Below are positions 18,286 through 48,400 of a DNA stretch of 64,000 nt, piece by piece (position 1 is the stretch's first letter; each line of letters begins with the position of its first letter). The notes under the pieces are model-generated. The model did no database searches, had not been told where the DNA came from, and was given only the letters and a program-made list of their open reading frames with translations. The DNA lies in the sequence record KJ019095.1; one strand, given 5' to 3'. The translations under genes were made by a program, and so were the position numbers.

Positions 18286-18296
18286 GGTAAACAAAA

Positions 18297-20243: not shown

Positions 20244-20282
20244 ATATGTTAGAATGGAGGGTATAACAACCCTCTTTTTTTT

Positions 20283-20450: not shown

Positions 20451-20565
20451 CAAATACCACCATTTTCAGGAACCTCTCACCAAACCTTTGGGATACACTA
20501 TGGGAAAACGGGTTGTTGATCGCCTATAATAAGGGGGTAGAACACAACTGGAGAGAAAATCCACT

Positions 20566-20946
20566 ATGAAAATCCAACAATCAATGCTTCGTCGTCTCGC
20601 CGCTAAGAAAGGAAAGACGCAGAACGGATTCACACTAATTGAACTGATGGTGGTTGTTGCTATCGTTGGTGTCCTGTCCGCTGTAGCACTTCCTCAACTC
20701 ACTAAAGCACAAGACCGTGCTAAGTCCGCAGCCGCATCTTCCACCGCATTAAACGCTGCTAAGACTTGTTCAATCGCTATCATCGGCGGTGATTCTACAG
20801 AGGGTGACGTCGCTGAAGTTACCACAGGGGACGTTACCAATGGAGCGATCACTTGTGCTGATGATGCCGAATTCGTATTCATCGGTGGCGGAGACACATG
20901 GACAGTAGCGATGGATGACGGCATTCCCGGTAACCCTTCTAAGTAA
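20566..20946 (+). CDS. Type IV prepilin (major-pilin-like)
   Basis: Basic leader ending QNG|FTLIELMVVVAIVGVLSAVALP (G/F cleavage site, Glu+5), two Cys in the head; upstream TATAAT promoter and GGAG RBS. Confidence 0.92.
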   Translation: MKIQQSMLRRLAAKKGKTQNGFTLIELMVVVAIVGVLSAVALPQLTKAQDRAKSAAASSTALNAAKTCSIAIIGGDSTEGDVAEVTTGDVTNGAITCADDAEFVFIGGGDTWTVAMDDGIPGNPSK

Positions 20947-27444: not shown

Positions 27445-30400
27445 ATGATCTCAACAGCGACTAAGATTAAATTTAAAAGGTCTGGTGTAGCCGGACGTAG
27501 ACCCTCCTTAGCTGATCTTCAGTTAGGTGAATTGGGGATCAATTATAACGATGGTAAACTATTTTTCCGACAGGAAAATGAAGTAGTTGGCTCTCGTATC
27601 ATTGAACCTGGACAGGGTGATGTAATCGGTAAGACTATTTTCGTATCCACAAAGGGTAACGATAACAATAGTGGTCTTAACGAAAGGGATGCCAAGAGAA
27701 CTGTTAAAGCGGCCGCCGCAGTAGCAGAACCTGGTGACTCCATCAAACTGTATCCAGGTCAGTACATCGAAGATAACCCTATCGTATTTAAGGATAGGGT
27801 ATCTGTAGAGGGTATGGAGCTTCGTAACGTTCTCGTTACTCCAGCCAACCCCAGTAAAGACTTGTATCAAGTTGGTGAGGCGTTCCACGCTACCAACCAT
27901 TCCTTTGTGTCCAATAGGGATTCAACAGATGGTGCCTCTATTATCACCTATCGTCCTCTAGAGGGAACTGCGTCTGACAGGTATTTTGACGCGGCTAGAC
28001 TCATCAGGGACAATCTTAGCTTCATTGCTAACGAGACAGTAGGTTTCCTAACCAGTGGATATTCAGGCTTTGCCGCTGGTCAGAGATCACAGGACGCTGC
28101 TCGTGCTCTAGAACTAAACAAGAACTTCATAGTAGAAGAAGCATTTCAATATATCAACTCTCCTGATTATACAGGAGCCACATACTTCAACCCAGACCCA
28201 GCACAGTGTAAGAGAGACCTAGGAAATATCATTGATGGTTGGAGATATGATCTCATCTCTGATGGTAACACCAGATCTACTGGTCTTGGTCTAACCTACT
28301 ACGCACCTATTCCCTTTGTGAATAGTGCTAATGTTGCTGACCTTGTATACAACAGAAATAACGGTGATGTTCTAATTGAAACCGACGTAGATACACAGGT
28401 TTCAGTTGGTGAGAAGATCAAACTACAGGATATCAGACTAGAGTGTGGTTCCTACAATAACGACTTCTTTATCACTGGTTTCAAGTATGATAACACCAGT
28501 GGTATTGGAACAGTTAATCTACCCTTTATCCATAACGTCAAGGTTGGAGACCTTGTTAAGTTTGATGGTTTAGAGTTTGATTGTCCTGCCTATGGTGCCA
28601 TTGAATATGGTATCCAAGACTTCAAGTATAATGAAACTACTGGTGGAAGTGTTGTCACACTCACCGAAGATCACGATCTAAAGATTGGTGACACCATTGA
28701 ACTAAGAGACCTTCAGTTCGATTGTCCCGCCTATGGTGGTGACTTCACTAACATCATCAACCTAGAATACAATAAGACCAGTGGTCAGGGTGTTATCACA
28801 TATGACAAACCCGCCGATCTCAAGTCTGGTGACGTTGTTATCCTCTATGACCTCACACTAACTTGTGATGCTTATGGTAACGCTATCTCAGTTACTGATT
28901 TCTCTTATGATAACTTCACTGGTATCACTGAAGTAGAAGTAAATAGACCCCACAACCTCCGTCCCGGAGACCTAATCAAACTAGAGAACCTTAAGTTCTC
29001 TTGTGATTCCTACCTTAATGAAACATACAAGGTCTCTAACTTTGTATATAATGAGAGCACTGGTGATAGTGTCCTCACCCTAACTGAACCACATAGTTTA
29101 GTTGCTGGTAAGAACGTCAGACTTGCTGACCTAGTTTTCTCCTGTAACTCCTATGTTCCAACCGCTAAAGCAATCTCTGATTTCCAGTATGATGAAGTAG
29201 TTGGTATCTCTACTATTACTCTAGCATCTCCACACAACTTATCAGTTGGTGAGCAGTTCAGACTAGAGGACCTAGTATTCTCCTGTAACTCATACTCCTT
29301 CACTGATATTCCTATCATTGATGCACCATATGATAATGTAACTGGTTATGTAACCCTATCGTTCTCTGGTGACCACGGACAACAGGTTGGTGAGAGAGTA
29401 AGACTCAGAGATATTGAGTACTCCTGCCCTGGTGGTTCAGGTATCACTACAACCTTGTTCCCCGATGGAACCTTTGGTTATGAGTTTGAAATCCTAAGTG
29501 TTCCAAACACTAAGAAGATGATTCTTAATGTTGGCACCTCCACTATTGAACACTCCTATGTGAGTGGTGGTACTGCTACCGTTGGTATTACAACTACTAT
29601 CTTCCCTGATGGAACACAAGGTTTCGACTTCAATGTATCCAGTGTTAATAGTTCCACTGTTATCGAAGCAAGTGTTGGTATTTCTACCATCGCTCACAAC
29701 TATGTTTCTGGTGGATCATTATTCGTTGGTTTCACTACCACAGTATTCCCCGATGGAACACAAGGTGATACCTTCAGAGTTAATTCTATTCCTTCTAGCA
29801 CTCAAATCAGTGTTAATGTTGGTGTATCTTCTATCGCCCATACTTTCGTATCCGGTGGTACAGCAACTGACCTAGACTCTTTCATCCCTGTATCTGGTTT
29901 CACCTACAATGAAGGTGACGGAACTGGACTAGTATCCCTAGACAAGGCACACAACCTAGTGGTTGGTGACTCTTTTGTTCTAGAGGATCTTAAGTTCAAC
30001 TGTAACTCCTACAGAACAGGTGGTACTTCTACTATTGATATCACTAACTTTGAGTATGATAAGGTAACCGGACTATCTACAGTCACACTATCTTCTTCAC
30101 ACAACCTACATGTTAATGATACCGTAGCACTATATGATATCAAGTTCTCTTGTCCTGGTGGTTCAGGTATTACAACTAATATCTTCCCCGATGGAACCAG
30201 AGACAACTTCTATGATGTAGTTGCTGACCTAAACCCCAACCAGATTATTGTTCGGGTTGGTAAGTCTGACATTACTCACACATATGCTAGTGGTGGTAGT
30301 CTATCCGTTGGTATCACTACTAACATCTTCCCTGATGGAACTAGACCTTCTGGTGACTTCTTCCAGGTTATCTCTGTCCCTTCTACCAAGTCTGTTCTAA

Positions 30401-33400
30401 CTCAGGTTGGTCTATCCTCTATCGCCCACTCATACGCAAGTGGTGGTAAGTTCTACACTGGTATCACTACTAATGTGTTCCCACAGGTATTCACTGACCC
30501 CAACATCAAGGTAACCAACGCTGTATATGACGAAGTATCTGGTGTTATCACCATTACTACTAACAAGGCACACGGACTTACCGCTACCGCACCTGTTCTA
30601 CTACAGGACCTAAACTTCTCTTGCCTCTCTGGTGGTGTAGGAAACACCCCAGGCAACCTTGTGTTCCCCAGGAACCAGGAAGTTTATGATGTTGTGTCCG
30701 TTCTATCTACTACACAATATACGATCAATGTAGGTCCTTCTGACTTCTCTCACACATATGTTGATGGTGGTACTTCTACCACACAGAACATCACCAAGGC
30801 AACCTACAACAAAGGAACCGGTGATCTAACAGTAACCCTAGACAAGCAACACGGTTATTCAGTTGGTGATCGTGCTAGTGTGGTTGATCTCCTCTTCTCC
30901 TGTCAGTCTGGTGGTCCCAACAACCAACCTGGAACACTTCTATTCCCCAGACCTACTGATGAGTATGAGGTTCTATCAGCAAGTGGTAAGACACTCACAG
31001 TTAATGTTGGAGCGTTCCCATCACTAGTTCATACCTATAAGAATGGTGGTTCACTAACCTATAGTTCTACTGTACTTCCTGTAACTAACGCAGTTTATGA
31101 TCAATCAACTGGAGTTCTAACACTCACCACATCAATTGCACTAGGGGCACCTGTTGGTTCTACCATTAAGATGCAGGGTCTAAACTTCTCCTGTGATTCT
31201 GGTGGTCCTGGTAATGACTCTGGTTCTATTGTATTCCCAAGACTAGACACCCCTACCTTCAAGGTGAAGGAAGTCAAGAGTGGTGTATCCTATGTTATCA
31301 ATGTAGGAACCTCCACACTCTCACACACCTATACTTCTGGTGGTTTCTCATCACTCAAGAAGTTGAAGAACGACCCCAATATTTTCAAAGTTATCGACAC
31401 CCCAACACCTAGTAAGGTTATTACTAATGTCGGTGTATCCTCTATCGCCCATGACTATGTGAGTGGTGGTAATATGTTCGTGGGTATCACCACTAATGTA
31501 TTCCCTGATGGAACTCGCCCTGATGGAAGTAGGTTCGAAGTTATCTCCGCCCTATCACCCAACCAGGCACTCATCAACATCGGTGTTTCTACTATCACCC
31601 ACAACTACGATAGTGGTGGTAGGATGCAGTATGGTACTACCAATGAGAGACCTGTTCTAGACTTCCTATACGATGGTCAGACTGGTATCTCCACTGTAAC
31701 TATTAGAGGAACTCATGGTTTGAACCAGGGTGACCTAGTGAAACTCAGAGGTCTTGAGTTCGCTTGTACTAACTCACCTGGTATTACAACTACTATCTTC
31801 CCAGATGGAACTGCCGCTGGTCTCAATATCTACAAGGTTACTGAGATTATTAGTAACAGTACCTTCAAGACAAATGTAGGTAGAGTTGGATTCGATCATA
31901 CTTACATCCAAGGTGGTTCCGCTTTCGTTGGTATCACTACTAACATCTTCCCAGATGGAACACAAGGTTACAACTATACAGTTGCCGCCATTCCTAATAA
32001 GAATCAGGTAACAGTTGATGTGGGTATCTCCAGTATCCAACATGATTATATTCGTGGTGGATCACTATTCTCTGGTAAGACTAACGAGAGAGATATCGCA
32101 GACTTCAAGTATGATCACATCTCTGGTGATGCGGTTCTTACCTTCAGAAAGGCACAGAACTTATTCACACAAGATCTAGTAAAACTTAAGAACCTTCAGT
32201 TTGATTGTCCAAACTCTACTGGTATCACTACTACTCTCTTCCCAGACGGAACCAGAAGTAACCTCTTCCTAATCAAGGAGAGACTAAACCCAACACAGTT
32301 CAAACTCAATGTTGGCACTTCACCATTCGGTCATGACTATGTGAGAGGAACAGGTCAGGCATTCGTTGGTATCACTACTAACATCTTCCCTGATACCAAG
32401 ACACAACCAAGTAAGTTATTCAAGGTTGTTGATGTCCCAACTCCTACTACTATCTCCGCCAAGATTGGTGTATCCACTATCTCCCACTCATATGTTAAGG
32501 GTGGTAAGGTATTCGTTGGTATTAACACTGATATCTTCCCTGGAGATGAGCAAGTATCACCACTAGGTGACACATATACAGTTCAGAGTATCACTAAAGA
32601 TGGTGAGTTGGTTATCAATGTTGGACTATCTTCTATCAGTCACTCCTATGGTGGCGGTGGTAAGGTTCTATATGGACAGAGTTCTGGTAACAACCTACAA
32701 CATATCACTGGTCCTGGTGTACTAGACGCAACCATCGCCGCTATCGATTTCGAGAAACAGGTAGCAATCAACGCACTAAACAACAGACCTTGGGGTTCAT
32801 TCGTTCCTGAAGAGACTGCTGTTGTGGAGGCGTTCGCCTATGATAACCAGACTGGTTTCGGAACAGTAACCGCTAGGGGAATCAACGTCAACACTGGTGA
32901 CACCATCAGGATGAGTGACATTCAGTTTGTTTGTTCTGAGGAGTACGCAGGTGTAACCACTACCTTCTTCCCTGATAATACTAGACCAGAGGGTCAGTAC
33001 TTTAGAGTAGAAAGAAGAATCAACATCGATGAGTTTGAAGTTAATATTGGTGTTTCTACTATCAAACACGTATTCAACTACGAAACAGGTGGTAACGTAT
33101 ATCGTTACAGACAGTCTATTCTAGATGTTAACTACGATAGATCCAGTGGTATCACTAGTATCCGAGCAACCAAGCATGGTTACAAGGCAAAAGATATTGT
33201 GGAACTAGGTGATATCGAGTTCGATTGTCCCGTATTCAAACCTCAATATGATATTGAGAACTTTGTTTATGATAACACAACTGGTCTATCCACAGTTACT
33301 ACTACTGTAGATAACACTATCAAGGTAGGTGACAATGTAAAACTAGCAGACATCAAACTAGAGTGTCCTCCATATGGTAACCAGAGAGTTATTGATAACT

Positions 33401-36400
33401 TTGTTTATGATAACAAGAGTGGTCTTTCCACCATATCACTAACAGCAGCACACGGACTCAACCTAAGACCTAGACCTTCTGTTTCTATCTCTACCGCCCT
33501 CTATGATAACCAGACTGGTATCCTAACCGTTACCACCAATGCTGACATCAACTTCACCGATAGAAGTGGTCAGGGTGTTCAACTCAGTGGTCTAAGGTTC
33601 TCCTGTGACTCCGCTGGTTTCCCTGGAACTCTCACCTATCCTGAAGAGAATCTAGTTTATGATATCCTAGAGATTCAGTCTCCTAGTAAGTTTAAGATTA
33701 ATGTTGGTCTCTCCACTATCGCTCACGAGTATGTGAATGGTGGTGCCGCTACTAAGGTTGATAGATTCGATGTGAAACTACAGGGTATCAAGTTTGATTG
33801 TCCCGCCTATGGAAACACAATCGATGTTACTAACTTCCTATACGATCAGAGAAGTGGTAACTCACTAGTTACCGTAGATAAGGCACACAAACTATCTGTT
33901 GGTGATAACATCAAACTAGCGGATCTCAAGTTCCAATGTGCTCCATATGGTAACGATTACAATGTTCTAAACGCAGATTACGACAACACAACTGGTATTA
34001 TTACAGTAACCACTAACCAAAACATCAACGGTGTTGGTGTTGGTGATACTATTCGCCTCTCCAGACTACAGTTTGATTGTGTAGGTAGTGGTCCTGAGTA
34101 TAATATCACTAACGTATTCTTCAATACTGGTAACAGATCAGTTATTCTCACAGTTCCTGAAAGACCAATTGGTCTAAACCCAGGTGATGACATTAAACTA
34201 ACCAATATGTCATACCTAGAAGGTGGTAGTGGTAATGTAGTTGCGTATCCAGACGGAAGAGATTCGAGTCTAAACATCTTCCGTATCAATGATGTTCAAC
34301 CTAACTCCATTCTCCCTGGATACTTCGATGTAACCACAGCGTTCCCCAATGTTAAGGATCCTTTCGCGATCTTCAACAATACTGGTAGACTAACCACTGG
34401 TATTACTACTAACATCTACCCTGAGAATGTAGGTGCTGAAGGTGGTTTCTATGAAGTTATCCGCCTAAGACAAGATAACCAGTTTGAGATTCAGGTAGGA
34501 ACCTCTACTATCACTCACAACTATGTGAGACAAGGACAGATGTTCACTGGTGTAACCACCAACTTCTTCCCTGGTAACCTACAGAACTCACCTAGAGGAA
34601 ACATCTTTGAGATTGTGGAAGTTCCCACAGCAACACAGGTGAGAATCAATGTAGGTGTATCTTCTATCTCTCATAGTTATGATAGTGGTGGTCAGATGTT
34701 TGTTGGTATTACTACTAACATCTTCCCTGATGGAACCAGAGGTAACCTATTCCCAGTTGTTGGAGTGGCAAATACTCTCACCCTAAGAATCGACGCGGGT
34801 GTATCCAGTATCCCCCACAACTATGTTTCTGGTGGAGAACTATTCGTAGGTATTACAACTAATATCTTCCCTGGTAACTCACAGAACTCACCAAGAGGTA
34901 GTATCTTCAAGGTCCTATCTAAGGATAATGAGTGTGGTTCTGATAGATTCACTATCAACGTTGGTGTATCTTCTATCACTCACGGTTATGTTGAGGGTGG
35001 AACAGTCACCACTGGTGTTACAACTAATAAGTTCCCTGATGGAACACACGGATTCAAGTTCCCTGTTATCGATGTTCTAGATGACAACTACTTCACCGTG
35101 AATGTTGGTACTTCTACTATCACTCACAACTATATCTCTGGTGGTTTCACTAGAAGACTTGAAGTTCCTATCAATAGTTTCGTATATGATAGAGTTTCTG
35201 GTCTATCCACAGTGGGTATCCAAAGTCACAGAATGAATATCGGTGACCTTGTGAAACTTCGTGATGTGAAGTTCAACTGTGATCCATATGGTGGAGAAAA
35301 GACTATCTCTGGTGTTGTTTATGATAATACCTCTGGTAGAATGACCGTTAACACCACTGGTTCTCATAGTCTAAACATCAATGATGTTGTGAAACTCTCC
35401 AATATTCAGTTGGATTGTTCCCCATATGGTAACGAGAGAACTATTACCGCCGCCACCTACAACAGAAACAATGGAAACCTAAGTGTTCAGGTATCTGAAC
35501 CTCACAACCTCAAGATTAGTGAGAATGTGAAACTTAAAGGTTTAGAGTTCTCCTGTTCCTCAGAACACGCAGGTGTGACAACAACAATCTTCCCAGATTC
35601 AACCGCACCTTCTCTAAACATCTACGCCATCCAGAGTATCACCAACTCCACAACCTTCATGGTTAATGTTGGAACCTCTACTATCAGTCACAACTATGTT
35701 TCTGGTGGTTCCGCTTTCGTAGGTATCACAACTAACATCTTCCCAGGTGATAGCCAGAACTCCCCCAGAGGTTCTTTCCTCAGTGTGGTAGATATCCCAG
35801 CATCAGACGCCTTCGTGGTGAATGTAGGGGTTTCTACTATCTCTCACGGGTATGTTAGAGGTGGATTGGTTCAGACAGGTATTACAACTGATGTATTCCC
35901 TGATGGAACACAGAGTGATTTCTTCAAGATTGAAGATGTCCCTAGTAATAATACAGTTGTAATCAACGCAGGTATCTCTTCTATCATCCATAGATACAAC
36001 TCTGGTGGTTTCGCCGCCAAGTATGTTACCTATCAGTCCAATAACTCACAACTACTTGATAGTTCTGTTATTAGAGTGAGTGGTGATTGTATGGCAGTTG
36101 GTGAGAGAGTTGAAGAACTCGCAGGTATTGTTACCTCCATCATCAAGAATGGTCCTTCAATCGCACCTGGTGGTATTCCAGTAGATGTGGTAAGTGCATC
36201 CTACGACCAGTCTGGTGGAGCACTATCAGTCACAGTCAAAGACGCAATTGACCTCACACCAACTAACATAGTTAGAATCGAAGGTCTTATCTTCGAGTGT
36301 GAGTCCTCTGGTGTAACAAACACTCGTGTATATCCTGACAATAAGGTATTCAACTATGAGGTTCTATCAGTTCAGTCTCCAACAACCTTCACTATCAATG

Positions 36401-39348
36401 TAGGTTCTCAGGCAGATATCCCACACACATATGTGAATGGTGGAACTGTAAGACCAGGTAACAAGTTTGATGTGGCAACCGCAACCTACAATACTGAAAA
36501 TGGTATTGTGAGAGTTACTACCACTGAAGATAACTACTTGGTTCTTGGTAGAGGAGTTAACCTACAGGGTCTAAACTTCTCCTGTACCTCTGGTGGTCCT
36601 AACAACAAACCTGGAACACTAACCTTCCCCGACAAAACACCAACCAATGTAACCGCCGCCACATATGATAGTGTGACTGGTGTATTACGTATCACAACCA
36701 ACAGACCTCACCAAGCATACAAGGACGCGTTTGTATCCCTAAACGGACTAACCTTCACTTGTGATCCAGGTGGTCCTCTAGTATTCCCTAGAAACCCTGA
36801 TACTAAGTCCTTCAGAGTTACTAAGAGAGTTGATGACTACACATATGAGTGTCAGTTGGCACCAACCAATAAGGTTCATACTTATCTAAGTGGTGGTACT
36901 TCATCCACAGGAAACGGAAACTTCAGAGTTTCTCGTCTCATTGATACAAAGACCTTCGAAGTCACAATGGTTCCTCTAGATCTACCACATACCTATGTAA
37001 ATGGTGGTTCCGCCGCTAGTGTATTCACTAGACAGATCATTGATGGAATCAACATCAACACTAGGAAGTGTGCTAGAGACGTTAGACGTATCTACCTCGC
37101 AGTGGCACACGATATCACTCGTGGTGGTAACTGGAAGTGTGTTGAAGGAGCGAAACTCTACTACGATAACGTGGGTCAAACCAAGTTTATCTCTGGTGGT
37201 GAAGTAAATCAAACCGTTGAGGCACTTGACTTCTCCCTAAACATTGTTAGATGTTTAATCAACAACGTAACATGGGGTGGAGTTCCAAGAGGATATCTCA
37301 CTAAGGGTGAGAGAAGTGAACTAAGAATTCCATCTTCAGCTAAGACTTCAGTGGTTGGTTTCAGACAACAACTACTTTCCAACCAATATACTACTGAGAA
37401 AAAGAATATCTCAGGTATGATATACGATAACCTTACGGGTATCGCAACCGTCACTACTAAACTCTCTCACGAACTCATCAAGTATGATGGTATTCAACTC
37501 TCAGATATTGAGATGAGATGTACTGGTAGTCCAAGGATTACCACCAATGTATTCCCTGATGGAACACAAGGTGAGATCTTTGAGGTTATGGAAACTCTAG
37601 ATGATAGAGTAGCATACATCGTAACTGACGCGTCATACACCAACACCACTGGTAAGTTGGTAGTAACAACAACAGGAAACAATGATATTCCTGTTGGATC
37701 AAGAGCAAAACTAGATGGTTTACTCTGGACTTGTTCATACGATCCTTCAAAACAACTTAAGTTCCCAGAGAACAGGAAGTTCCGTTATGAGGTTATCGCA
37801 AAACCAGATGGTACAACACTAGAGTTCAATGTTGGTATCTCTACGATTCCACACACATTTGTTCCAGCTCCTATAGATGTTGAATACACAGTCAAGGAGG
37901 ATCCAGTTAAGTTTAAGGTTCATGTTGGTACAGTTTCCTTCCCACACACCTACTTCGGTGGTGGAACAGTATGGCACAAACTACCATTCACTCCACCTTT
38001 CACCCAAACACAGATCAAGGACGTATCACAACAGAAAGATCCAGTCCAGTTCTCTAACAATACTCCTAACGGATGTGCTAATGTATTCTCCGCTATCAGT
38101 AATTGTATTGGTGTTGTTACTAGTATCGTAGCAAATGGATTAGAAGGATCAGGTATCTCCACAACTTATCCAGGTAATGATGGTAAAGGTGTTCCAACTA
38201 TGGATGAGATGCCTTCACAGGGTGTTGGTAACATTATCAAAGGTCCATACATCAGAAACTGTACGAACTTCGTTCCCAAGTCTATTGGTATGAGAATGGA
38301 TGGTTTCGACGCGGAACCTGGTGATGAAATCTCCAATGGTGTTCAAGGTTCATCTAACGTTGACTCCTTCACCCAGTTCAACCCTGGTGGTGTTGGTTGT
38401 TCCATCTCCAACGGAACCTACCAACAGTTGGTTTCTATCTTCACTATCTGTTGTGACGAAGCAATCGTATGTGACTCTGGAGCACAACTCGACCTCACTA
38501 ACTCCAACTCTTCCTTCGGTAGATTGGGTCTAGTCGCAAGAGGTATTGGTGATAAACTCTCCAAGTGTATCGACAGATATACTGGTATCGTCGCCAAAGA
38601 GGCATCAATCGAAGATGACCTAGTTGTTGTGAAGGGTATTGGTGATAAGAGACCCTACGATGGTCAGGGTATTTTCTTCGGAGAACTCTTCAGGGATGTG
38701 GTTAGTATCGAAGTTCTGGACGGTGGTTCAGGTTACAACGATGATATTCCACCTAACGCGTTTGTCGCAGAACCTACTGGTCCCGCTGGTATTAAGGCGG
38801 AAGTTTCACCAACAGTCAGAGATGGTGTTGTTGTTTCTATCGAGGTTATCGCAAATGGTAACCAATACAGAGAGAAATTCCCTGAGGTTGTAATATCACC
38901 TCCTAAGAGTCCTCTTGGTAGAACCGCAAAAGCAAGGGCAATTACCGAACCTCTCTACTATAATGTAGAAAGTTCTTCCCCACCTGAAGAGGGTACAACT
39001 AGTATCATCTTCAAACAGCGTCTAAATAATACCGTATCGGTAGGCACAACTGTATTCTTCTCTAGATTAAGTCTACAGATTGCCTCCTCTCACTCCTTCG
39101 AATACATTGGTGCTGGTAACAGCATTAACGGAGCAAGACCTTCTGAAGGTGGAGTTCCAATTAAGGAAAATGAGATCGTGAAGGAAGACGGTGGTTCAAT
39201 TGTCTATACCTCCACTGACCAGGCAGGTAACTTTAACATTGGTGACGATTTCGTTATCAACCAGTTCACTGGTACTATCACTGGTAGATCGTTCGATCAA
39301 TCAGTCCTAAATAAAGTTACTCCACTCATCATCGCCCTAGACAGTTAA
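27445..39348 (+). CDS. Giant virion structural protein (3967 aa) with 31 nested ~95-aa repeat domains inserted in a beta-helix/helical scaffold
   Basis: Late promoter at 27385; N-terminal KIKFKRSG...PS..DL..GELGINY.DGKLF attachment motif; FVSTKGNDNNSG pectin-lyase-like start; repeats YDNxTG...HxLxxGD...FxC and GITTNIFPDG...NVG...HxYxxGG. Confidence 0.92.
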   Translation: MISTATKIKFKRSGVAGRRPSLADLQLGELGINYNDGKLFFRQENEVVGSRIIEPGQGDVIGKTIFVSTKGNDNNSGLNERDAKRTVKAAAAVAEPGDSIKLYPGQYIEDNPIVFKDRVSVEGMELRNVLVTPANPSKDLYQVGEAFHATNHSFVSNRDSTDGASIITYRPLEGTASDRYFDAARLIRDNLSFIANETVGFLTSGYSGFAAGQRSQDAARALELNKNFIVEEAFQYINSPDYTGATYFNPDPAQCKRDLGNIIDGWRYDLISDGNTRSTGLGLTYYAPIPFVNSANVADLVYNRNNGDVLIETDVDTQVSVGEKIKLQDIRLECGSYNNDFFITGFKYDNTSGIGTVNLPFIHNVKVGDLVKFDGLEFDCPAYGAIEYGIQDFKYNETTGGSVVTLTEDHDLKIGDTIELRDLQFDCPAYGGDFTNIINLEYNKTSGQGVITYDKPADLKSGDVVILYDLTLTCDAYGNAISVTDFSYDNFTGITEVEVNRPHNLRPGDLIKLENLKFSCDSYLNETYKVSNFVYNESTGDSVLTLTEPHSLVAGKNVRLADLVFSCNSYVPTAKAISDFQYDEVVGISTITLASPHNLSVGEQFRLEDLVFSCNSYSFTDIPIIDAPYDNVTGYVTLSFSGDHGQQVGERVRLRDIEYSCPGGSGITTTLFPDGTFGYEFEILSVPNTKKMILNVGTSTIEHSYVSGGTATVGITTTIFPDGTQGFDFNVSSVNSSTVIEASVGISTIAHNYVSGGSLFVGFTTTVFPDGTQGDTFRVNSIPSSTQISVNVGVSSIAHTFVSGGTATDLDSFIPVSGFTYNEGDGTGLVSLDKAHNLVVGDSFVLEDLKFNCNSYRTGGTSTIDITNFEYDKVTGLSTVTLSSSHNLHVNDTVALYDIKFSCPGGSGITTNIFPDGTRDNFYDVVADLNPNQIIVRVGKSDITHTYASGGSLSVGITTNIFPDGTRPSGDFFQVISVPSTKSVLTQVGLSSIAHSYASGGKFYTGITTNVFPQVFTDPNIKVTNAVYDEVSGVITITTNKAHGLTATAPVLLQDLNFSCLSGGVGNTPGNLVFPRNQEVYDVVSVLSTTQYTINVGPSDFSHTYVDGGTSTTQNITKATYNKGTGDLTVTLDKQHGYSVGDRASVVDLLFSCQSGGPNNQPGTLLFPRPTDEYEVLSASGKTLTVNVGAFPSLVHTYKNGGSLTYSSTVLPVTNAVYDQSTGVLTLTTSIALGAPVGSTIKMQGLNFSCDSGGPGNDSGSIVFPRLDTPTFKVKEVKSGVSYVINVGTSTLSHTYTSGGFSSLKKLKNDPNIFKVIDTPTPSKVITNVGVSSIAHDYVSGGNMFVGITTNVFPDGTRPDGSRFEVISALSPNQALINIGVSTITHNYDSGGRMQYGTTNERPVLDFLYDGQTGISTVTIRGTHGLNQGDLVKLRGLEFACTNSPGITTTIFPDGTAAGLNIYKVTEIISNSTFKTNVGRVGFDHTYIQGGSAFVGITTNIFPDGTQGYNYTVAAIPNKNQVTVDVGISSIQHDYIRGGSLFSGKTNERDIADFKYDHISGDAVLTFRKAQNLFTQDLVKLKNLQFDCPNSTGITTTLFPDGTRSNLFLIKERLNPTQFKLNVGTSPFGHDYVRGTGQAFVGITTNIFPDTKTQPSKLFKVVDVPTPTTISAKIGVSTISHSYVKGGKVFVGINTDIFPGDEQVSPLGDTYTVQSITKDGELVINVGLSSISHSYGGGGKVLYGQSSGNNLQHITGPGVLDATIAAIDFEKQVAINALNNRPWGSFVPEETAVVEAFAYDNQTGFGTVTARGINVNTGDTIRMSDIQFVCSEEYAGVTTTFFPDNTRPEGQYFRVERRINIDEFEVNIGVSTIKHVFNYETGGNVYRYRQSILDVNYDRSSGITSIRATKHGYKAKDIVELGDIEFDCPVFKPQYDIENFVYDNTTGLSTVTTTVDNTIKVGDNVKLADIKLECPPYGNQRVIDNFVYDNKSGLSTISLTAAHGLNLRPRPSVSISTALYDNQTGILTVTTNADINFTDRSGQGVQLSGLRFSCDSAGFPGTLTYPEENLVYDILEIQSPSKFKINVGLSTIAHEYVNGGAATKVDRFDVKLQGIKFDCPAYGNTIDVTNFLYDQRSGNSLVTVDKAHKLSVGDNIKLADLKFQCAPYGNDYNVLNADYDNTTGIITVTTNQNINGVGVGDTIRLSRLQFDCVGSGPEYNITNVFFNTGNRSVILTVPERPIGLNPGDDIKLTNMSYLEGGSGNVVAYPDGRDSSLNIFRINDVQPNSILPGYFDVTTAFPNVKDPFAIFNNTGRLTTGITTNIYPENVGAEGGFYEVIRLRQDNQFEIQVGTSTITHNYVRQGQMFTGVTTNFFPGNLQNSPRGNIFEIVEVPTATQVRINVGVSSISHSYDSGGQMFVGITTNIFPDGTRGNLFPVVGVANTLTLRIDAGVSSIPHNYVSGGELFVGITTNIFPGNSQNSPRGSIFKVLSKDNECGSDRFTINVGVSSITHGYVEGGTVTTGVTTNKFPDGTHGFKFPVIDVLDDNYFTVNVGTSTITHNYISGGFTRRLEVPINSFVYDRVSGLSTVGIQSHRMNIGDLVKLRDVKFNCDPYGGEKTISGVVYDNTSGRMTVNTTGSHSLNINDVVKLSNIQLDCSPYGNERTITAATYNRNNGNLSVQVSEPHNLKISENVKLKGLEFSCSSEHAGVTTTIFPDSTAPSLNIYAIQSITNSTTFMVNVGTSTISHNYVSGGSAFVGITTNIFPGDSQNSPRGSFLSVVDIPASDAFVVNVGVSTISHGYVRGGLVQTGITTDVFPDGTQSDFFKIEDVPSNNTVVINAGISSIIHRYNSGGFAAKYVTYQSNNSQLLDSSVIRVSGDCMAVGERVEELAGIVTSIIKNGPSIAPGGIPVDVVSASYDQSGGALSVTVKDAIDLTPTNIVRIEGLIFECESSGVTNTRVYPDNKVFNYEVLSVQSPTTFTINVGSQADIPHTYVNGGTVRPGNKFDVATATYNTENGIVRVTTTEDNYLVLGRGVNLQGLNFSCTSGGPNNKPGTLTFPDKTPTNVTAATYDSVTGVLRITTNRPHQAYKDAFVSLNGLTFTCDPGGPLVFPRNPDTKSFRVTKRVDDYTYECQLAPTNKVHTYLSGGTSSTGNGNFRVSRLIDTKTFEVTMVPLDLPHTYVNGGSAASVFTRQIIDGININTRKCARDVRRIYLAVAHDITRGGNWKCVEGAKLYYDNVGQTKFISGGEVNQTVEALDFSLNIVRCLINNVTWGGVPRGYLTKGERSELRIPSSAKTSVVGFRQQLLSNQYTTEKKNISGMIYDNLTGIATVTTKLSHELIKYDGIQLSDIEMRCTGSPRITTNVFPDGTQGEIFEVMETLDDRVAYIVTDASYTNTTGKLVVTTTGNNDIPVGSRAKLDGLLWTCSYDPSKQLKFPENRKFRYEVIAKPDGTTLEFNVGISTIPHTFVPAPIDVEYTVKEDPVKFKVHVGTVSFPHTYFGGGTVWHKLPFTPPFTQTQIKDVSQQKDPVQFSNNTPNGCANVFSAISNCIGVVTSIVANGLEGSGISTTYPGNDGKGVPTMDEMPSQGVGNIIKGPYIRNCTNFVPKSIGMRMDGFDAEPGDEISNGVQGSSNVDSFTQFNPGGVGCSISNGTYQQLVSIFTICCDEAIVCDSGAQLDLTNSNSSFGRLGLVARGIGDKLSKCIDRYTGIVAKEASIEDDLVVVKGIGDKRPYDGQGIFFGELFRDVVSIEVLDGGSGYNDDIPPNAFVAEPTGPAGIKAEVSPTVRDGVVVSIEVIANGNQYREKFPEVVISPPKSPLGRTAKARAITEPLYYNVESSSPPEEGTTSIIFKQRLNNTVSVGTTVFFSRLSLQIASSHSFEYIGAGNSINGARPSEGGVPIKENEIVKEDGGSIVYTSTDQAGNFNIGDDFVINQFTGTITGRSFDQSVLNKVTPLIIALDS

Positions 39349-39735: not shown

Positions 39736-42700
39736 ATGCCTCTAAATTATCTTACCGGAAGAGTAAGTAGATTACAAGTTGGATTTCCAGGGTTTTCAAC
39801 AGCAAAGGACCTTACAGTTGATGTAGCAGGTGCCATTGGTATTGATACCCAAAACCCAAGAGCAGCTGCCGACTTCCCAGATGTCAGTATCCGTGGTGAT
39901 ATTGTTGACTCTGTTGGATTTACCGGTGGTATTGGGTATTTTCTAGCGCAAGATGTTCAGGGTGTTCGGTGGGTAGAGGCTCCACCTATCAACTCTAACG
40001 CCATCTTAGTGTTAGACAATGGAGTTATCGTTGGTGCTGGATCATTCATTGGTCTAAACTTTGACTCTGGTAAGGATGAGGACTTCCTCTCGGTTGTTCC
40101 TGACCCACTAAACCCACAGATTGCAAAGATTGCATATGATGTTCGTTGGGTAAGATATAATTACGGTAATAATAAAGGTATCTCCACAGGTTTTGGAGAT
40201 AATGGTGACTACTCCTCTATCCCTGGTTATGGAACCACAGAGGCAGTTGGTGTTACCTCAGTTGGTATTGGTACTAACCAACCACTAGATGACTTCCAAG
40301 TTGGTATTGGATCTACTGGTGTTACTATCAACGGACCTCTAGGTCTAGTTGATGCAGAAATTATTAAAGCAAAATCAATCTCGGTTGAAGGAAACCTAGA
40401 GGTTGAATCACTTATTGTTAGACCTGGTGTTGCCACTCTAACCACTCTAGATGTATTGAACGAGGCGTTCATACCAGTAGAGTATGTTGGTTTCTCCAGC
40501 ATTCAAGATGCAAATATTGATGCTCTCTTTGCTAATCAGTTACTAGCAGGTATTACTACCCTAGGTTTCGGTGGTGAAGATGTATTCATCCTCAACGACT
40601 TATATGTTCAGGGTGGTTTAGGTACCTTCGATGGCGACGTATTCGTTGGTGGAGACCTAACTGTTAAGGGTGAGACGTTCTTCAACCAGATTAACGCAGT
40701 CAACTTATCAGTATCTGGTATTGCCACTATCGTCCAAGCGGAGATAGCTGTTGGTTTAGTTACCGATCTAAAAGTATCTGGTTTCTCTACACTATCAGAT
40801 TTCTCATTCAACATTGGTGTTGGTACATACCTAGAACTAGAAGATCTAGATGTATCTGGTGTTGGTAGTTTTGGTGTTGTCAACTCTGGTGATATTAATG
40901 TTAGTGGTGGTTTAACCGCTAGTGAGATTGATGCAGATAAGGGATACATTGGTATTCTCACAGCAGACTCTATTGTATCTGGTGCAGGTACTATTGGTTC
41001 TATCGAGTCTGATGGGAACCTAACAACACTTAATGATATTATTGTTGGTGGTGCTTCAACCTTCGTTGGTTTGGGTACTTTCCAAGACGATCTCTTTGTT
41101 GGTGGTGACCTCTTTGTTAGAGGTGATGTTACCTTTAAGAATATTAATGGTGAACAACTACTAATCAGTGGTATTGGTACCATCAAGGAACTAGTCTTTG
41201 ATAGTGGTATTGGAACCTCACTAGAAGTGAGAGATCAGATTACGACTGGTATATCTACGATCAATGAAGCAGATATTCAAGATGCCGCTGTTGAGAGACT
41301 TACTGTTGGTGATGCAGAGATCATCGGTATCGCAACTATTACCGAGATTGATGTAGATAGAGGTAGAGTTGGTATCCTAACTGGTACAGACCTCTCCTAT
41401 GCTGGTATCGGTACTATCACGGAGATTGATGTTGACCAGGGTAGAGTTGGTCTAGTCACTGGTGACACACTACTATACTACGAACAGTCTAGGATCAATA
41501 GAGTTACCTTCTTTGATAACTACCTATCAGTTAATCAGAGTCTAAGAGTTTCTGGTCTCTCCACCTTTGTTGGAACAGGTACATTCTTCAATGACTTGTA
41601 TGTTGGTGGTGACCTATATGTTGCTGGTGAACTAAACTTCAAACAACTCAATGGTGAGAACCTATACCTAACTGGTGTTGGTACCATCTATGATTTACGT
41701 AACACTGTTGGTTTCATTACTAACCTCTACGTAGAAGAGTCTGTAACTGGTTTAGCAACTATCAGTAGTCTAGTTGGTTCTTCCGCCACTATCACAGACT
41801 TCACTGGTGAGTCACTACTCATCCAGAATCCATTCAACCCAATGCCTCTGGACCCAACTGGGATCCCAGGACAGGGTGTTATTGATAGTCTCCTAGTTAG
41901 AAACCTAACTTCCTCTAACAACATTCTAGCCAATGACATTGATGCCAACTTCGTTGACACCGATGATCTAAAGGCTGGTGTTGGTACTATCACTGACCTA
42001 GAGTGGACTACCGCTGTTGGTGATGACACTACTACCAATACTCTACAGGTTACTGATACAGCAACCATTAACATCATCGATGCCAATCAGATCGATGCCG
42101 AAGATGCTAATATTGGAGTTGCCACCCTCTCTAGTCTCCTAGTAACTGGTGTCACTACCTTCAAGGGTCAGGTTGATATTGAGGATATTGAGTTCGTTGA
42201 CCAGAGTGTCACCGGTATTTCCTCTATCAACATCCTCAAGTTCAATGTTGGTTATGGAACCTACCTAGAGGTTACTGACTCAGTAACTGGTGTTGGAACT
42301 ATTGGTCTTGCCAGTATCACAACCGCTCAGGTATCTTTCCTAGATGTAAGAGATGAGGTAGTTGGGGCATCCACTATTGGTGTTCTATCAGTAACTGAAG
42401 GATTTGCAGTATCTGGTTTCTCCACCTTTGTTGGTTTCACTACCTATAAAGGAGATGTATTTGTTGATGGTAACTTAACTGTTACTGGTTTCGTTAGTTT
42501 CACACAACTAAACGCTGATCAATCACAGATTGGTATCCTAACTGTATTCGATGCGTTAGACGCCAGAACTGGTGTTGGTACATTCAAACACCTAGAGACA
42601 GTAGATAGTGCCGTTCTATCGGGTGTATCTACTATTGGTCTCTCAACCTTCAAGAATGGTGATGTTAATATTAACCGCAACCTAACAGTTGGTGGTATCA

Positions 42701-45413: not shown

Positions 45414-48400
45414 GTGGCGAATCAGAATTTTCGTGTCAAAAAAGGTATAGAAGTTGGCTTAGGTGCCACTTTTCTATACGCAGACGACAGTGGAGTTGGC
45501 ATTAATAGTGCTAGCCCACGATCAAACCTAGACGTTCGAGGTAGATCCCAAACAGAGGAACTACTGGTAGACAACTATGCAGAGGTGCAAGGACCCTCTA
45601 CATTCGTTGGACTAGGTACCTTTGGGGGTGATCTATATGTTGGGAATGATCTATATGTAAAGGGCAACCTATCATTCACCAGTTTTGAATCTGAGACTGG
45701 TAATGTAACAGGTGTTCTTACCACAAGAGACTTTAATGTAACCGGATTATCTACGTTTGCGGGAGACGCCACCTTCCAAAGTGACGTAAATATCTCTGGT
45801 GCTTCTTCAATTACTGGAAACTTAGTAGTTTCTGGTGCCTCTACGCTCACAGGTATCGTCACAACTGGCGATGACCTCTATGTGGGTGGTAGTTTATATG
45901 TATTCAATGATATCTTCTATGATGAGATTACTGGTAGAAACCTCAGTATCTCTGGTATTGCCACACTCAGACAGTTAGAAATCCAACAGGACCTAGAAGT
46001 TGCAGGTCTCTCCACATTTGTTGGTTTAGTATCGTTCAGAGATGCAGTAGGTACAAACCTCACAGTTTATAATCTTTCCGCCAATACTGGTAACTTCGTA
46101 GAGATTAACGTCGATGGTGGAGGAGGCGGCGGTGGCGGTACTGGTATCGATAGTACCTCCGTCAATACCGAGTTCTTAAACGTCACTGGTGTTGCAACAT
46201 TTAACAATGGTATTGCCACCAACTTCAGCGCAGAGTTTATTGACGCTGGTGTAACCACAACTACCGACCTCCACTTCACTAATGGTTACGGTGTCAATCT
46301 CAATATGAGTGGCATCACAACTGTTGGTATTCTAACAGTCTATGAGAATATCTATGACTCTAGAAACCAAGTTGGTTATGGTGACTCACTACTAGTCACA
46401 CAGGGTGGGAAACTAGTATGGACTAGACCTGATATTGCAGGTATTGCCACTTCATTCCAACCAGGTTCTACCTTCTATGTAAGTGAGAATGGTAGTAATA
46501 CCAATGATGGTAGAAGTCCAGAGAAAGCATGGAGTTCTATTGCATATGCCGTATCACAGATTGGAGATACTTCTCACGATATTCTAGAGGTTACTGCTGG
46601 TGAATACACAGAAACCTTCCCTATCACAGTCCCTAAAGGTTTAACCATTTCTGGTGCTGGACAAAGGGCAACCATTGTTAGACCGTCACAGGCAACAGAA
46701 ACCAATGATGGTTTCCTACTAAACGATAGATCCACTATCCATAACATCACAGTTACTGGATTCTACAAACCACAAGGTTCTATCAACTACGCCTTCAAGT
46801 TTAGTGTTGGAGCAGCAATCACCAGTAGAAGTCCTTATGTTGATAAGGTCACGGTCATCAACAAAGGTACTCAGACAAGTGCCAGTGACCCATATGGTTA
46901 TGGTTCAGCTGACTCCTACCCAACCACAGCACCTGGTGGTGCTGGTGTTTTAGTTGATGGTAGTGTAGTTGCAACCAACTCACTAGAAGCAGCAATTCTC
47001 CTCAATGAGGTTACACTATTCACTGCTGGCAACCAAGGTATTAAGATTACCAATGGTGGTAGAGTAGAGTGGTTGAATGGTTTCATCTACTTCGCTTCTG
47101 AAGCACTTGTAGGTCTTAGTGATAAGACTACTGGTTTAGCGGGTGCTGGTAAGGCAAGACTAACCCTAGAGAACGCCTCTGGTGGATTGGTTGGTGGTAA
47201 TACCGTTCAATACTATGATAGTGATGGAACCACAGTTCTTGCTTCTGGTACCATTGATAATGTATCTGGTAGTTATGTAACACTAACCAACGCTGGTGTT
47301 GGTACATTCACAACTCCTAGAAATAGAACAGCCAAGAAGGTTGACTTTGTTAATGGAGCACAACTATCCACAGCACAGGCAAGGTTCGGTACATCCTCAC
47401 TAGATGTAACTGGTGCCGGAACTGATAACATCACAGTTGATTCCACTTCAGACTTTGGGTTTGGAACTGGAGACTTCACCGTTGAATTCTGGATATACAG
47501 AACTGGTAATATTAATGGTAAGGTAATCTGTGACTTCAGAGATACCGCCGCTACAGATCAAGCAATTACTATCCAAGGTGATGGTGGTAATGAGACTGAT
47601 GTTTATATTGGTACTACATCCGTTGTCACTGGTACAGTTCCTACCACACTGAATGCTTGGAACCATATCGCTGTTTGTAGAGTTGGTTCTACCATCACTC
47701 AGTATATTGATGGTGCTGTTTCTGGTAGTGGAACTGCTGCTACTGATCTAGGTGTTGCTAGACAACTAACCTTTGGTGATAGGTACGACAATAGTAACAA
47801 CGGTCCTACAGCATACCTAGATGAACTTCGTGTCACTAAGGGGGCAGCAAAATACACAGGAGCATTCACTTCACCTTCAGTAGCACTCACAGGTGATAAG
47901 GATACTTCTATCCTACTACACTTTGATGGTATCAATGGAGCAACCTCCACTACAGATGATATCATTGTCCTCCAGGATATTCGTATCACTGGTGGTAACA
48001 CAGCAGATAAAGTTACCCTAGCAGACTACAGTCAGTTTGGTGCTGACCTCAGGTCTATCGCTTGTGCCATTGAATATGGTAACCAGGGTATGATTGGTGA
48101 TGGTGATGGAGTAACTCTCCGTGCTATCTCTATCAACTTCAACCATGTAGGTGCTCTTGGTGATATCACTAACGATCCTAACCTAGCGATTCAATCGAAC
48201 GAGGTTATCGAACTCAATGGTGGTCAAGTATCCTATGTAAGTATTGACCAGAAGGGTGACTTCCGTGTTGGTGAATCCTTCTATGTTAACCAGGAAACTG
48301 GTGATGTATCATTCAACAACACAACAACTGATCTAACCTCACTATCTAGTCTAACCATCACTGATGGTACTAACAACTCACTTATCACTCCTACCTCTGG

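What the first reader, a model, noticed from the sequence alone, without database searches (positions are those of the whole stretch)
28336..37980. Recursively nested ('balanced parentheses') domain architecture in the 3967-aa virion protein
Seen in sequence: the ~95-aa repeat splits into an A half (V/I..F.Y(D/N)..TG...TV....H.L..GD.I.L..L.F.C) and a B half (GITT.IFPDG...F.V......NVG.S.I.H.Y..GG). Adjacent A+B units (for example VTNAVYDEVSG...HTYVDGG) are complete domains. Most halves, however, occur in runs. Counting A=+1 and B=-1, the first insert reads AAAAAAAA BBB AA BB, then a B interrupted by three whole AB domains, then B A BB A BBB. Depth reaches 8 and returns exactly to 0 at about 32680, where the helical scaffold (LDATIAAIDFEKQV) resumes. 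Later inserts (32824-36020, 36187-37020, 37408-37980) also return to 0, including cases where a whole domain sits inside an A or B half. The total is 31 A and 31 B halves, and the count never goes negative. Inference: domains were repeatedly inserted into a loop of the same domain type (mostly between C-x-x-Y and GITT). The chain would run out and back to form antiparallel stalks with side branches, giving a dendritic appendage rather than beads on a string. I know of no description of insertion nesting this deep in a phage protein.
Basis: partly seen in the sequence, partly recalled or inferred. Interest (0 to 1): 0.92.

Follow-up and report, generated by a model that had tools for sequence, protein, structure and literature searches.

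The report
Eight-deep nested domains in phage fibre protein
A 3967-residue protein of a marine cyanophage, probably a tail-fibre-like virion protein, carries 31 copies of one small beta-barrel domain inserted into one another up to eight levels deep, which is deeper and larger than the six-level case in cyanobacterial RNA polymerase that I found as the deepest described.

Summary
ORF 27445-39348 (+) of Synechococcus phage ACG-2014f holds 31 A halves and 31 B halves of a ~90-residue domain. Read as brackets they form a perfectly balanced word. Depth reaches 8 and returns to 0 at the four places where non-repeat scaffold resumes.

This is not chance: about 1e-5 for random order and 3e-5 under a run-length null. 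In 119 homologues A and B counts correlate at r = 0.99. Every large indel among 30 orthologues is a whole AB unit or a balanced block.

Bracket-matched halves share history (Mantel r = 0.44, P = 0.002), whereas order-preserving pairing gives r = -0.06. In AlphaFold models, A halves whose bracket partner is present have three strands. Two orphan A halves lose the third strand.

Nested self-insertion is therefore well supported. The tools returned no coordinates, so I did not see the 3D reunion of halves directly.

The domain has no Pfam family and no solved relative. It weakly resembles the E1 FCCH beta-barrel.

The principle is known from cyanobacterial RNA polymerase Si3 (six levels, a different fold). 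This is a new, deeper variant in a phage protein. The tree-like shape and the fibre role are inferred.

The parts
27445..39348 (+). Intact ORF of 3967 aa (stop codon 39346-39348). The GenBank record KJ019095.1 annotates it as 'hypothetical protein'.
27445..28338 (+). N-terminal non-repeat region, aa 1-298. It contains a fibre-type N-terminus, a sub-threshold DUF1565 (beta-helix) match at aa 70-126, and a ~70-aa helical unit at aa 210-286.
28339..32661 (+). Insert 1, aa 299-1739. It holds 15 AB domains and reaches depth 8. A five-level trunk carries two side leaves. The fifth level bears a 3-level stalk and a 2-level stalk at its A|B junction, plus three leaves in its B loop.
30460..31470 (+). 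Split B half, aa 1006-1014 plus 1310-1342. It hosts three contiguous AB domains (aa 1024-1300).
   Evidence: Orthologue P0020 has a fourth AB here.
32662..32829 (+). Scaffold segment, aa 1740-1795. Depth is 0 here.
32830..36009 (+). Insert 2, aa 1796-2855, with 11 AB domains. It consists of one leaf, a six-level nest (aa 1894-2567) and a three-level nest (aa 2578-2855).
33397..33801 (+). Split A half, aa 1985-2006 plus 2110-2119. It hosts one AB domain (aa 2017-2100).
   Evidence: Seven orthologues have a second AB inserted at the junction of the guest.
34120..34392 (+). Degenerate innermost AB domain, aa 2226-2316. The A half lacks Cys and the B half lacks His-Tyr.
   Evidence: and reading. 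Orthologues keep clearer copies.
35158..36030 (+). AAABBB nest (aa 2572-2862) used for AlphaFold job 1.
28753..29877 (+). aa 437-811, used for AlphaFold job 2. It contains two A halves without partners, followed by AAABBB.
36010..36192 (+). Scaffold segment, aa 2856-2916. Depth is 0 here.
36193..37008 (+). Insert 3, aa 2917-3188. It has one leaf AB, and one AB whose B half (aa 3050-3066 plus 3156-3188) hosts an AB (aa 3070-3151).
   Evidence: 22 orthologues carry an extra AB at the junction of the first domain.
37009..37422 (+). Scaffold segment, aa 3189-3326. It includes a second copy of the ~70-aa helical unit (aa 3199-3277).
37423..37965 (+). Insert 4, aa 3327-3507. It is one AB whose B half (aa 3365-3387 plus 3486-3507) hosts an AB (aa 3394-3473).
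37966..39345 (+). C-terminal non-repeat region, aa 3508-3967. It is shared with other giant cyanophage fibre-like proteins and matches PHROG 5342 'tail fiber' at aa 3634-3700.

Best explanation
**What it is.** The protein is a fibre-like structural protein of a T4-like cyanophage. Its non-repeat scaffold has an N-terminal fibre-type start, a probable beta-helix, and short helical units. The scaffold is interrupted at four places by 'trees' made of one ~90-residue beta-barrel domain.

**The domain.** It has two halves:
- A: three strands, ending in an invariant Cys.
- B: three to four strands, with an invariant Pro, Gly and His.

The two chain termini of the domain, and the A|B junction, are each bridged by linkers of only 2-13 residues.

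**How the nests arose.** Copies of the whole domain were inserted again and again into loops of other copies. There are 15 insertions at the A|B junction, three inside B and one inside A.

**How the chain runs.** It runs outward through a series of A halves, turns at the innermost contiguous domain, and runs back through the matching B halves. Each level is one domain assembled from two sequence-distant halves. This gives rods up to eight domains long, with side branches.

**What is shown.** The bracket word, its conservation, the balanced indels, the co-history of matched halves, and the dependence of the A-half fold on the presence of its bracket partner in AlphaFold models.

**What is inferred.** The actual 3D reunion of halves, the rod or tree shape, presence in the virion, and a role in spacing or host-surface contact.
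For: **The bracket word.**
- The curated parse gives 31 domains, an empty stack and depth 8. Linkers are A-A 9-13 aa, A-B 3-9 aa and B-B 2-6 aa.
- Chance is 1.2e-5 (random order) to 3e-5 (run-length null).

**Homologues.**
- r(nA, nB) = 0.99 over 119 proteins with 2-35 halves of each kind.
- 61 of 67 distinct words never go negative, against 11.4 expected by chance.
- Among 30 orthologues (48-98% identity), every indel of 30 aa or more in the repeat region is an AB unit of 86-95 aa or a balanced block. Two of these units sit exactly at A|B junctions, at aa 2057 and 2953.
- Gained units match other contiguous AB domains over 83-93 aa, covering both halves in one alignment, at 37-59% identity.

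**Co-history of matched halves.** The Mantel correlation of A-A and B-B similarity for the 13 unsplit host domains is r = 0.44 (P = 0.0016). For contiguous domains it is 0.57. With order-preserving pairing it is -0.06.

**AlphaFold.**
- Balanced AAABBB: all three A halves, including the outermost one 200 aa from its partner, form three strands (21-22 of 35-37 residues in strand). pLDDT is 75.6 and pTM 0.51.
- Construct with two extra A halves: the orphans have 8 and 10 residues in strand and no third strand. The three partnered halves have 20-23 residues in strand. pTM falls to 0.35.

**AB as a unit.** There are contiguous copies within the window protein, and a 133-aa protein that is a single AB (P0259).

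**Fibre context.**
- PHROG 'tail fiber' families match.
- Neighbouring genes encode a baseplate wedge initiator and tail-collar proteins.
- Homologues carry Mtd_N and Peptidase_S74 domains.
- BFVD relatives are named tail fibre, long tail fibre, fibre, endosialidase and baseplate wedge initiator.
Against: - The tools returned no coordinates or contact maps, so I never observed the packing of matched halves.
- The AlphaFold alignments were shallow (25-31 rows) and the models only moderately confident.
- pLDDT of the orphan halves was only slightly lower than that of partnered ones. The difference lies in strand formation.
- A coupling log-odds test, trained on contiguous domains, did not clearly favour nested pairing (fractions 0.47-0.69). 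The mutual-information comparison was only suggestive (0.21 against 0.05-0.10).
- Automatic tokenising gives exact balanced words in only 50 of 119 homologues, and in 41 of 143 more distant proteins. I traced the excess of A to diverged or degenerate B halves in the cases I inspected, but not in all.
- There is no proteomic or imaging evidence that the protein is in the virion. Its oligomeric state is unknown.
Confidence: 0.8

Rival explanations
1. A runs and B runs are two different repeat types that fold independently, for example as separate solenoids or stacks. Under this view the apparent AB 'domain' is only an A unit lying next to a B unit, and the balance is incidental.
For: The halves occur mostly in runs. 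The orphan A halves in AlphaFold job 2 still have pLDDT of about 75-85. The coupling log-odds test was inconclusive.
Against: - Nothing in this model requires balance. Yet the four blocks and all five split halves enclose balanced content.
- nA and nB track each other at r = 0.99.
- No orthologue indel changes one count alone, even though the runs of similar repeats should favour unequal exchange.
- Orphan A halves lose their third strand while partnered ones keep it.
- Matched halves share history.
Confidence: 0.07
2. The halves do pair, but partly between chains or between neighbouring levels. In an oligomeric fibre, A halves of one subunit would complete B halves of another. Alternatively, adjacent nested domains would exchange strands, so the rods would be interdigitated rather than a string of discrete domains.
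For: Many phage fibres are trimers, and some homologues carry the Peptidase_S74 chaperone domain typical of trimeric fibres. In RNA polymerase Si3, recursively inserted domains are reported to exchange secondary-structure elements (PMC11515920; PMC10895346). pTM is only 0.35-0.51.
Against: Linkers of 2-13 residues at every step make the intrachain hairpin the simplest geometry. A monomer model already gives all halves of the balanced construct their full set of strands. I did not model any oligomer.
Confidence: 0.1
3. The pattern is a relic. The nesting records past insertions, but the outer halves no longer fold together, and the region is now largely a flexible or differently folded spacer.
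For: One innermost domain (aa 2226-2316) is clearly degenerate. DNA copies are only 60-85% alike, so the insertions are old.
Against: - Outer halves keep the invariant Tyr, Gly and Cys (A) and Pro, Gly and His (B) positions.
- They score 26-67 bits against the half profiles.
- They are conserved at 50-60% identity across orthologues.
- Balance is maintained by ongoing indels.
Confidence: 0.03

Closest known systems
Si3 insertion of cyanobacterial RNA polymerase beta' (recursively inserted SBHM / HABAS hybrid-motif domains)
   Same: In both, one small beta domain type is inserted repeatedly into copies of itself. Several domains are built from sequence-distant elements, and the chain runs out and folds back to give an elongated, branched array. 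Si3 is described as eight or nine domains in a 'six-level recursive insertion architecture' (PMC13114784, PMC11515920), with a crystal structure (PMC10895346).
   Different: - The fold and family differ. The AB profile hits no RNA polymerase chain in PDB sequences at E up to 10. Foldseek lists only one beta' chain, at probability 0.05.
- This protein has 31 domains in four trees with depth 8, and apparently about 10 in relatives P0033-P0035.
- The host is a phage fibre-like protein, not an enzyme.
- Halves are cleanly separable, which gives a strict bracket word.
FCCH domain of ubiquitin-activating E1 enzymes (Pfam PF16190)
   Same: This is the only solved fold that either AlphaFold model retrieves with high Foldseek probability (0.96-1.00; about 131-149 aligned columns; TM 0.51 to the isolated mouse FCCH, 2v31). 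Two homologues reach 28-29 bits on PF16190, and one BFVD relative is named after this domain. FCCH is itself an inserted beta-barrel.
   Different: The window protein has no Pfam hit at all. The homologues stay below the 29.5-bit cut-off. Foldseek E-values are 0.005-0.1, and none is at or below 0.001. The context is not a ubiquitin system. Homology is unproven.
Periplasmic adaptor proteins of efflux pumps (AcrA / MexA / HlyD type). This comparison is from my own knowledge and was not tested here.
   Same: These have an out-and-back chain topology in which successive domains are each formed from an N-terminal and a C-terminal segment, nested around a hairpin.
   Different: They have only three or four levels, each level is a different domain type, and there is no self-insertion or branching. 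No tool returned a similarity.
Beads-on-a-string repeat domains of phage fibres and adhesins (tandem Ig-like, FN3 or BACON-type arrays)
   Same: Many copies of a small beta domain decorate a phage structural protein. Fourteen of the 31 domains here are contiguous, like ordinary tandem domains.
   Different: Seventeen domains are split by guests. The order of halves is a bracket word, not a tandem array.

Membership tests
Recursive (nested) domain-insertion architecture | Complete copies of a domain lie between the two sequence halves of another copy | tested here: met
   Seventeen split domains enclose only whole domains.
Recursive (nested) domain-insertion architecture | The order of halves is balanced at every level and is kept balanced in relatives | tested here: met
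   The stack parse ends empty. r(nA, nB) = 0.99. All orthologue indels are balanced.
Recursive (nested) domain-insertion architecture | The two halves of each split domain come together in three dimensions | tested here: inconclusive
   The support is indirect. The strand content of A halves depends on the presence of the bracket partner, and matched halves share history. No coordinates or contacts were available.
SBHM / HABAS hybrid-motif superfamily (the domain that nests in RNA polymerase Si3) | Detectable sequence or fold similarity to SBHM domains | tested here: not met
   The AB profile finds no PDB chain of RNA polymerase at E up to 10. Foldseek gives one beta' chain at probability 0.05 and none in the second search. 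A Gly-Asp pair before the last A strand recalls the GD-box described in PMC11515920. This is a lead only.
E1_FCCH (PF16190) | Score at or above Pfam's gathering threshold (29.5 bits) | tested here: not met
   The window protein and its 12 contiguous domains give no hit. Homologues P0065 and P0008 reach 28.0 and 29.1 bits.
E1_FCCH (PF16190) | Fold similarity to solved FCCH barrels | tested here: inconclusive
   Foldseek probability is 0.96-1.00 in two independent models, but E is 0.005-0.1 and TM is about 0.5 on the isolated domain.
Phage tail fibre / baseplate-associated structural protein | Similarity to annotated fibre proteins and location in the tail or baseplate gene cluster | tested here: met
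   PHROG 17885 and 5342 'tail fiber' match. Downstream genes encode a baseplate wedge initiator and tail-collar proteins. BFVD relatives are named fibre proteins.
Phage tail fibre / baseplate-associated structural protein | Presence in the virion and attachment to the tail | not testable with these tools
   I found no proteomic or imaging data for this phage.
Pectin-lyase-like beta-helix (DUF1565, PF07602) as scaffold | Pfam gathering threshold (20.3 bits) | tested here: not met
   17.4 bits, E = 0.003, aa 70-126 only.

The most novel reading that the evidence does not exclude
This protein and its cyanophage relatives would be the deepest and largest case of recursive self-insertion of a protein domain known. 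It has 31 domains, eight levels here and apparently about ten in relatives. These would fold into branched, tree-like rods. That would be a previously undescribed way of building a phage appendage, from a domain family that has no Pfam entry and no solved structure.
Probability: 0.55. Interest if true: 0.85.

Novelty: new variant of a known kind. Interest (0 to 1): 0.74.

Why it matters
**Protein architecture.** Recursive domain insertion is regarded as rare and shallow. A 2026 survey of 2.7 million classified domains singles out the six-level nest of cyanobacterial RNA polymerase as its extreme (PMC13114784). A phage protein with 31 self-inserted domains and eight levels would move that limit. 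It would also show that the principle arose independently in a different fold.

**A natural experiment.** The family offers dozens of orthologues that differ by single balanced insertions. These bear on which loops tolerate insertion and on how such nests grow.

**Why surveys miss it.** BFVD stores this protein cut into three pieces that sever the nests. Long phage proteins are usually absent from structure databases.

**Phage biology.** It suggests that some of the giant 'hypothetical' genes of marine cyanophages encode branched, rod-like appendages rather than simple fibres. This bears on how these abundant viruses meet their hosts.

Tried and rejected
- **Covariation coupling test.** I learned log-odds from contiguous AB pairs and applied them to split pairs. 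Nested pairing beat permutations in only 47-69% of nests, depending on how many column pairs were used. I treat this as inconclusive because the effective sample is about 177. The related mutual-information comparison was only suggestive.
- **Fully automatic bracket parsing with partial HMM hits.** Split halves and diverged halves were mislabelled, so most proteins failed for technical reasons. I replaced it with a marker-based count and a curated parse of the window protein.
- **Using the 143 extra proteins from the representative search as an independent balance test.** Many are gene fragments, and their B halves are too diverged for my profile, scoring only 3-8 bits. Apparent A-only runs such as P0171 and the trailing A halves of P0068 are followed by B-like stretches. 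I draw no conclusion from this set.
- **Pfam, PDB sequence and Foldseek PDB searches for a named relative of the AB domain.** Nothing was significant except the marginal FCCH likeness.
- **Scaffold pieces against Pfam and PDB.** I found only sub-threshold DUF1565 and Phycobilisome-like hits.
- **Literature searches for a prior description in phages.** I found none.
- **Recent tandem duplication as the origin.** I rejected this. DNA copies are only 60-85% alike, and tandem duplication of AB cannot produce AABB.
- **E. coli rpoC as an SBHM yardstick.** I did not fetch it, because no tool or paper had shown me a nucleotide accession for it.
Full report
**Where the window comes from.** The 11.9-kb region is 100% identical to Synechococcus phage ACG-2014f isolate Syn7803US34 (KJ019095.1; Kyanoviridae, a T4-like cyanomyovirus). 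More than 40 other isolates carry the gene at 99% identity or better. ORF 27445..39348 (+) is intact, encodes 3967 aa, and is annotated 'hypothetical protein'. Downstream lie a 1868-aa hypothetical protein, a 2069-aa 'baseplate wedge initiator' and three tail-collar-domain proteins.

**Checking the observation.** I built one HMM for each half from the protein's own copies (A 37 positions, B 46 positions) and mapped them back. I later refined both on homologues.
- A curated list of 31 A and 31 B halves parses with a stack that ends empty. This includes one A and three B halves that are themselves split by whole AB domains.
- The parse gives 31 domains, a maximum depth of 8, and a return to depth 0 at aa 1739, 2855, 3188 and 3507, where non-repeat sequence resumes.
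- Fifteen domains host guests at the A|B junction. One hosts a guest inside A (after about profile position 23). Three host guests inside B (after about positions 9-14 or 25). Fourteen are contiguous.
- Linkers are short throughout: A to A 9-13 aa, A to B 3-9 aa, B to B 2-6 aa.
- One innermost domain (aa 2226-2316) is degenerate.
- No other ORF of the window contains these halves.

**Is it more than chance?**
- For 31 A and 31 B in random order, the chance of a balanced word is 1/32.
- The chance that all four scaffold-delimited blocks are balanced is 1.2e-5.
- Under a null that keeps the run structure and draws run lengths from the pooled distribution, the joint probability is 3e-5.

**Relatives.** A search of 5.8 billion proteins gave 135 relatives, and I analysed 120 of them.
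- About 30 are full-length orthologues (48-98% identity; S-CAM7 gp208 is the only named one).
- The rest are other giant cyanophage proteins of 2200-5500 aa with different scaffolds. Precomputed Pfam domains among them include YHYH, Mtd_N and Peptidase_S74.
- With a marker-based count (one token per half, placed at its C-terminal motif), nA and nB range from 2 to 35 and correlate at r = 0.99.
- 61 of 67 distinct words never go below zero, against 11.4 expected for random order. 50 of 119 proteins give exact balanced words without any curation.
- The commonest deviation is +1. In the orthologues this is the degenerate domain, whose B half is not detected.

**Indels among the 31 aligned sequences (the window protein and 30 orthologues).** Every indel of 30 aa or more within the repeat region is either one AB unit of 86-95 aa or a balanced block.
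- An AB unit at aa 1208 in 1 sequence.
- An AB unit at aa 2057 in 7 sequences.
- An AB unit at aa 2953 in 22 sequences.
- An AB unit around aa 3097-3122 in 5 sequences.
- In P0025 and P0027-P0030, two stalks and the three leaves of insert 1 are absent, leaving a shorter but still balanced word.
- The units at aa 2057 and 2953 sit immediately after the Cys that ends an A half, that is, exactly at the junction.
- The gained units find their best matches in other contiguous AB domains of the same protein, in single alignments spanning both halves (83-93 aa, 37-59% identity).

Whole domains are therefore the unit of gain and loss, and loops of the same domain are the landing sites.

**Do bracket-matched halves belong together?**
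1. *Geometry.* With linkers of 2-13 residues, the B half that follows the last A of a run must lie next to it, the next B next to the previous A, and so on. An order-preserving pairing would need long crossing connections that do not exist (inference).
2. *Shared history.* For the 13 unsplit host domains of the window protein, the matrix of A-A similarities correlates with the matrix of similarities of their bracket partners at r = 0.44 (P = 0.0016 against random re-pairing). This is close to the 0.57 seen for contiguous domains. Reversing the partner order within each nest gives r = -0.06.
3. *AlphaFold.* The tool returns no coordinates, so I used strand content as the read-out.
 - In the balanced construct AAABBB (aa 2572-2862; 31-row alignment; pLDDT 75.6, pTM 0.51), all three A halves form three strands, with 21-22 residues in strand. 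This includes the outermost half, which lies 200 residues from its partner.
 - In aa 437-811, two A halves lack partners and are followed by AAABBB (pLDDT 80.9, pTM 0.35). The two orphans have only two short strands (8 and 10 residues) and no third strand. The three partnered halves have 20-23 residues in strand.
 - An A-only solenoid would predict no such difference.
4. *Statistical coupling.* The tests were weak or inconclusive.

I conclude that nested pairing is well supported but not directly seen.

**What the domain is.**
- In the 12 contiguous copies of the window protein, six columns are invariant: a Tyr, a Gly and the terminal Cys in A, and a Pro, a Gly and a His in B.
- The domain has no Pfam family and no relative among PDB sequences.
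- Both AlphaFold models retrieve E1 ubiquitin-activating enzymes over about 131-149 aligned columns. This is the FCCH beta-barrel, and TM is 0.51 to the isolated mouse domain. Foldseek probability is 0.96-1.00, but E-values are only 0.005-0.1.
- Two homologues reach 28-29 bits on PF16190, just under its cut-off. One BFVD relative is named after that domain.
- The likeness is reproducible but marginal.
- A profile of the domain finds only 577 clusters among 1.84 billion representatives. These include short proteins such as a 133-aa single-AB protein, which fits an autonomous folding unit.
- BFVD relatives are almost all cyanophage proteins, named tail fibre, long tail fibre, fibre, endosialidase or baseplate wedge initiator.

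**The scaffold.** The non-repeat parts give only sub-threshold hits: DUF1565 (a beta-helix) at aa 70-126, and a Phycobilisome-like helical stretch at aa 204-275. A ~70-aa helical unit (aa 210-286, again at aa 3199-3277) is itself a repeat in other giant cyanophage proteins, with at least 14 copies in P0061. The C-terminal 130 residues and aa 3597-3704 are shared with those proteins. The four trees therefore appear to sit in loops of a helical or beta-helical fibre scaffold.

**Mechanism proposed.**
- *Shown:* the topology of the chain as a forest of four trees.
- *Inferred:* each level is one barrel made from an outgoing A and a returning B, so a nest of n levels is a rod of n stacked domains with both chain ends at its base. 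Side leaves and double stalks give branches.
- *Inferred from context:* the protein is a tail or baseplate appendage, and the trees act as spacers or multivalent contact surfaces.

The insertions are old, because DNA copies are only 60-85% alike. Turnover nevertheless continues among orthologues.

**Comparison with what is known.**
- Recursive insertion of one domain type into itself is documented for the Si3 region of cyanobacterial RNA polymerase beta'. It has eight or nine hybrid-motif (SBHM/HABAS) domains, several built from distant segments.
- A survey of 2.7 million classified domains described this as a six-level recursive architecture and presented it as the extreme (PMC10895346, PMC11515920, PMC13114784).
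- The present case works the same way, but it is not a member of that family. I detected no sequence or fold similarity to SBHM.
- It has about three and a half times as many domains, is two levels deeper, is branched into four trees, and sits in a phage structural protein.
- Relatives P0033-P0035 show about ten A halves in a row before the first B. Some of those tokens are weak.
- I found no description of such nesting in a phage protein.
- BFVD stores this very protein as three ~1320-aa pieces that cut through the nests, which may explain why surveys missed it.

**Verdict.** The novelty is a new, more extreme variant of a known architectural principle, in a new domain family and a new biological setting. 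The main gap is direct 3D evidence.

Noticed in passing
window 13915-17268 and 17261-20614: There is a tandem duplication with a period of 3346 nt, 98.6% identical (46 mismatches). It covers part of psbA, a small ORF, psbD, two 'carboxylesterase' fragments and several small ORFs. The second psbA copy is annotated as shorter (765 nt against 1080 nt). It could be a real duplication of the photosystem II cassette or an assembly artefact.
   Followed up: partly
window 28072-28302 (aa 210-286) and 37039-37275 (aa 3199-3277): A ~70-aa helical unit of the scaffold occurs twice in this protein. In other giant cyanophage proteins it is a many-copy repeat, with at least 14 copies in P0061 and at least 6 in P0094. 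It gives a weak, sub-threshold match to the Pfam Phycobilisome family (E = 0.06), and P0094 carries that precomputed annotation.
   Followed up: partly
window 39736-45342 and the next ORF (record 204123-210332, about window 45414-51623): Two further giant genes follow directly: a 1868-aa hypothetical protein and a 2069-aa 'baseplate wedge initiator'. Neither contains A or B halves. I did not analyse their architecture.
   Followed up: no
outside the window (the same phage species, BFVD entries A0A0E3G2L9 and A0A0E3G351): At least two other proteins attributed to phage ACG-2014f contain related AB nests (33-36% identity to the AAABBB model). One of them is named 'tail fiber-like protein'. The module is therefore used in several structural genes of one genome.
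   Followed up: no
homologues P0033-P0035 (about aa 3389-4790): These relatives, which carry a YHYH domain, show about ten A halves in a row followed by eight B halves, then four A and five B. This suggests nests deeper than eight levels. Two A tokens and one B token there are weak, and gaps of 35-41 aa hint at undetected elements.
   Followed up: partly
A halves followed directly by their own B instead run into a Gly/Ser-rich turn (for example ...SCPGGSG...). The junction sequence therefore differs between hosts and leaves. I did not quantify this.
   Followed up: no
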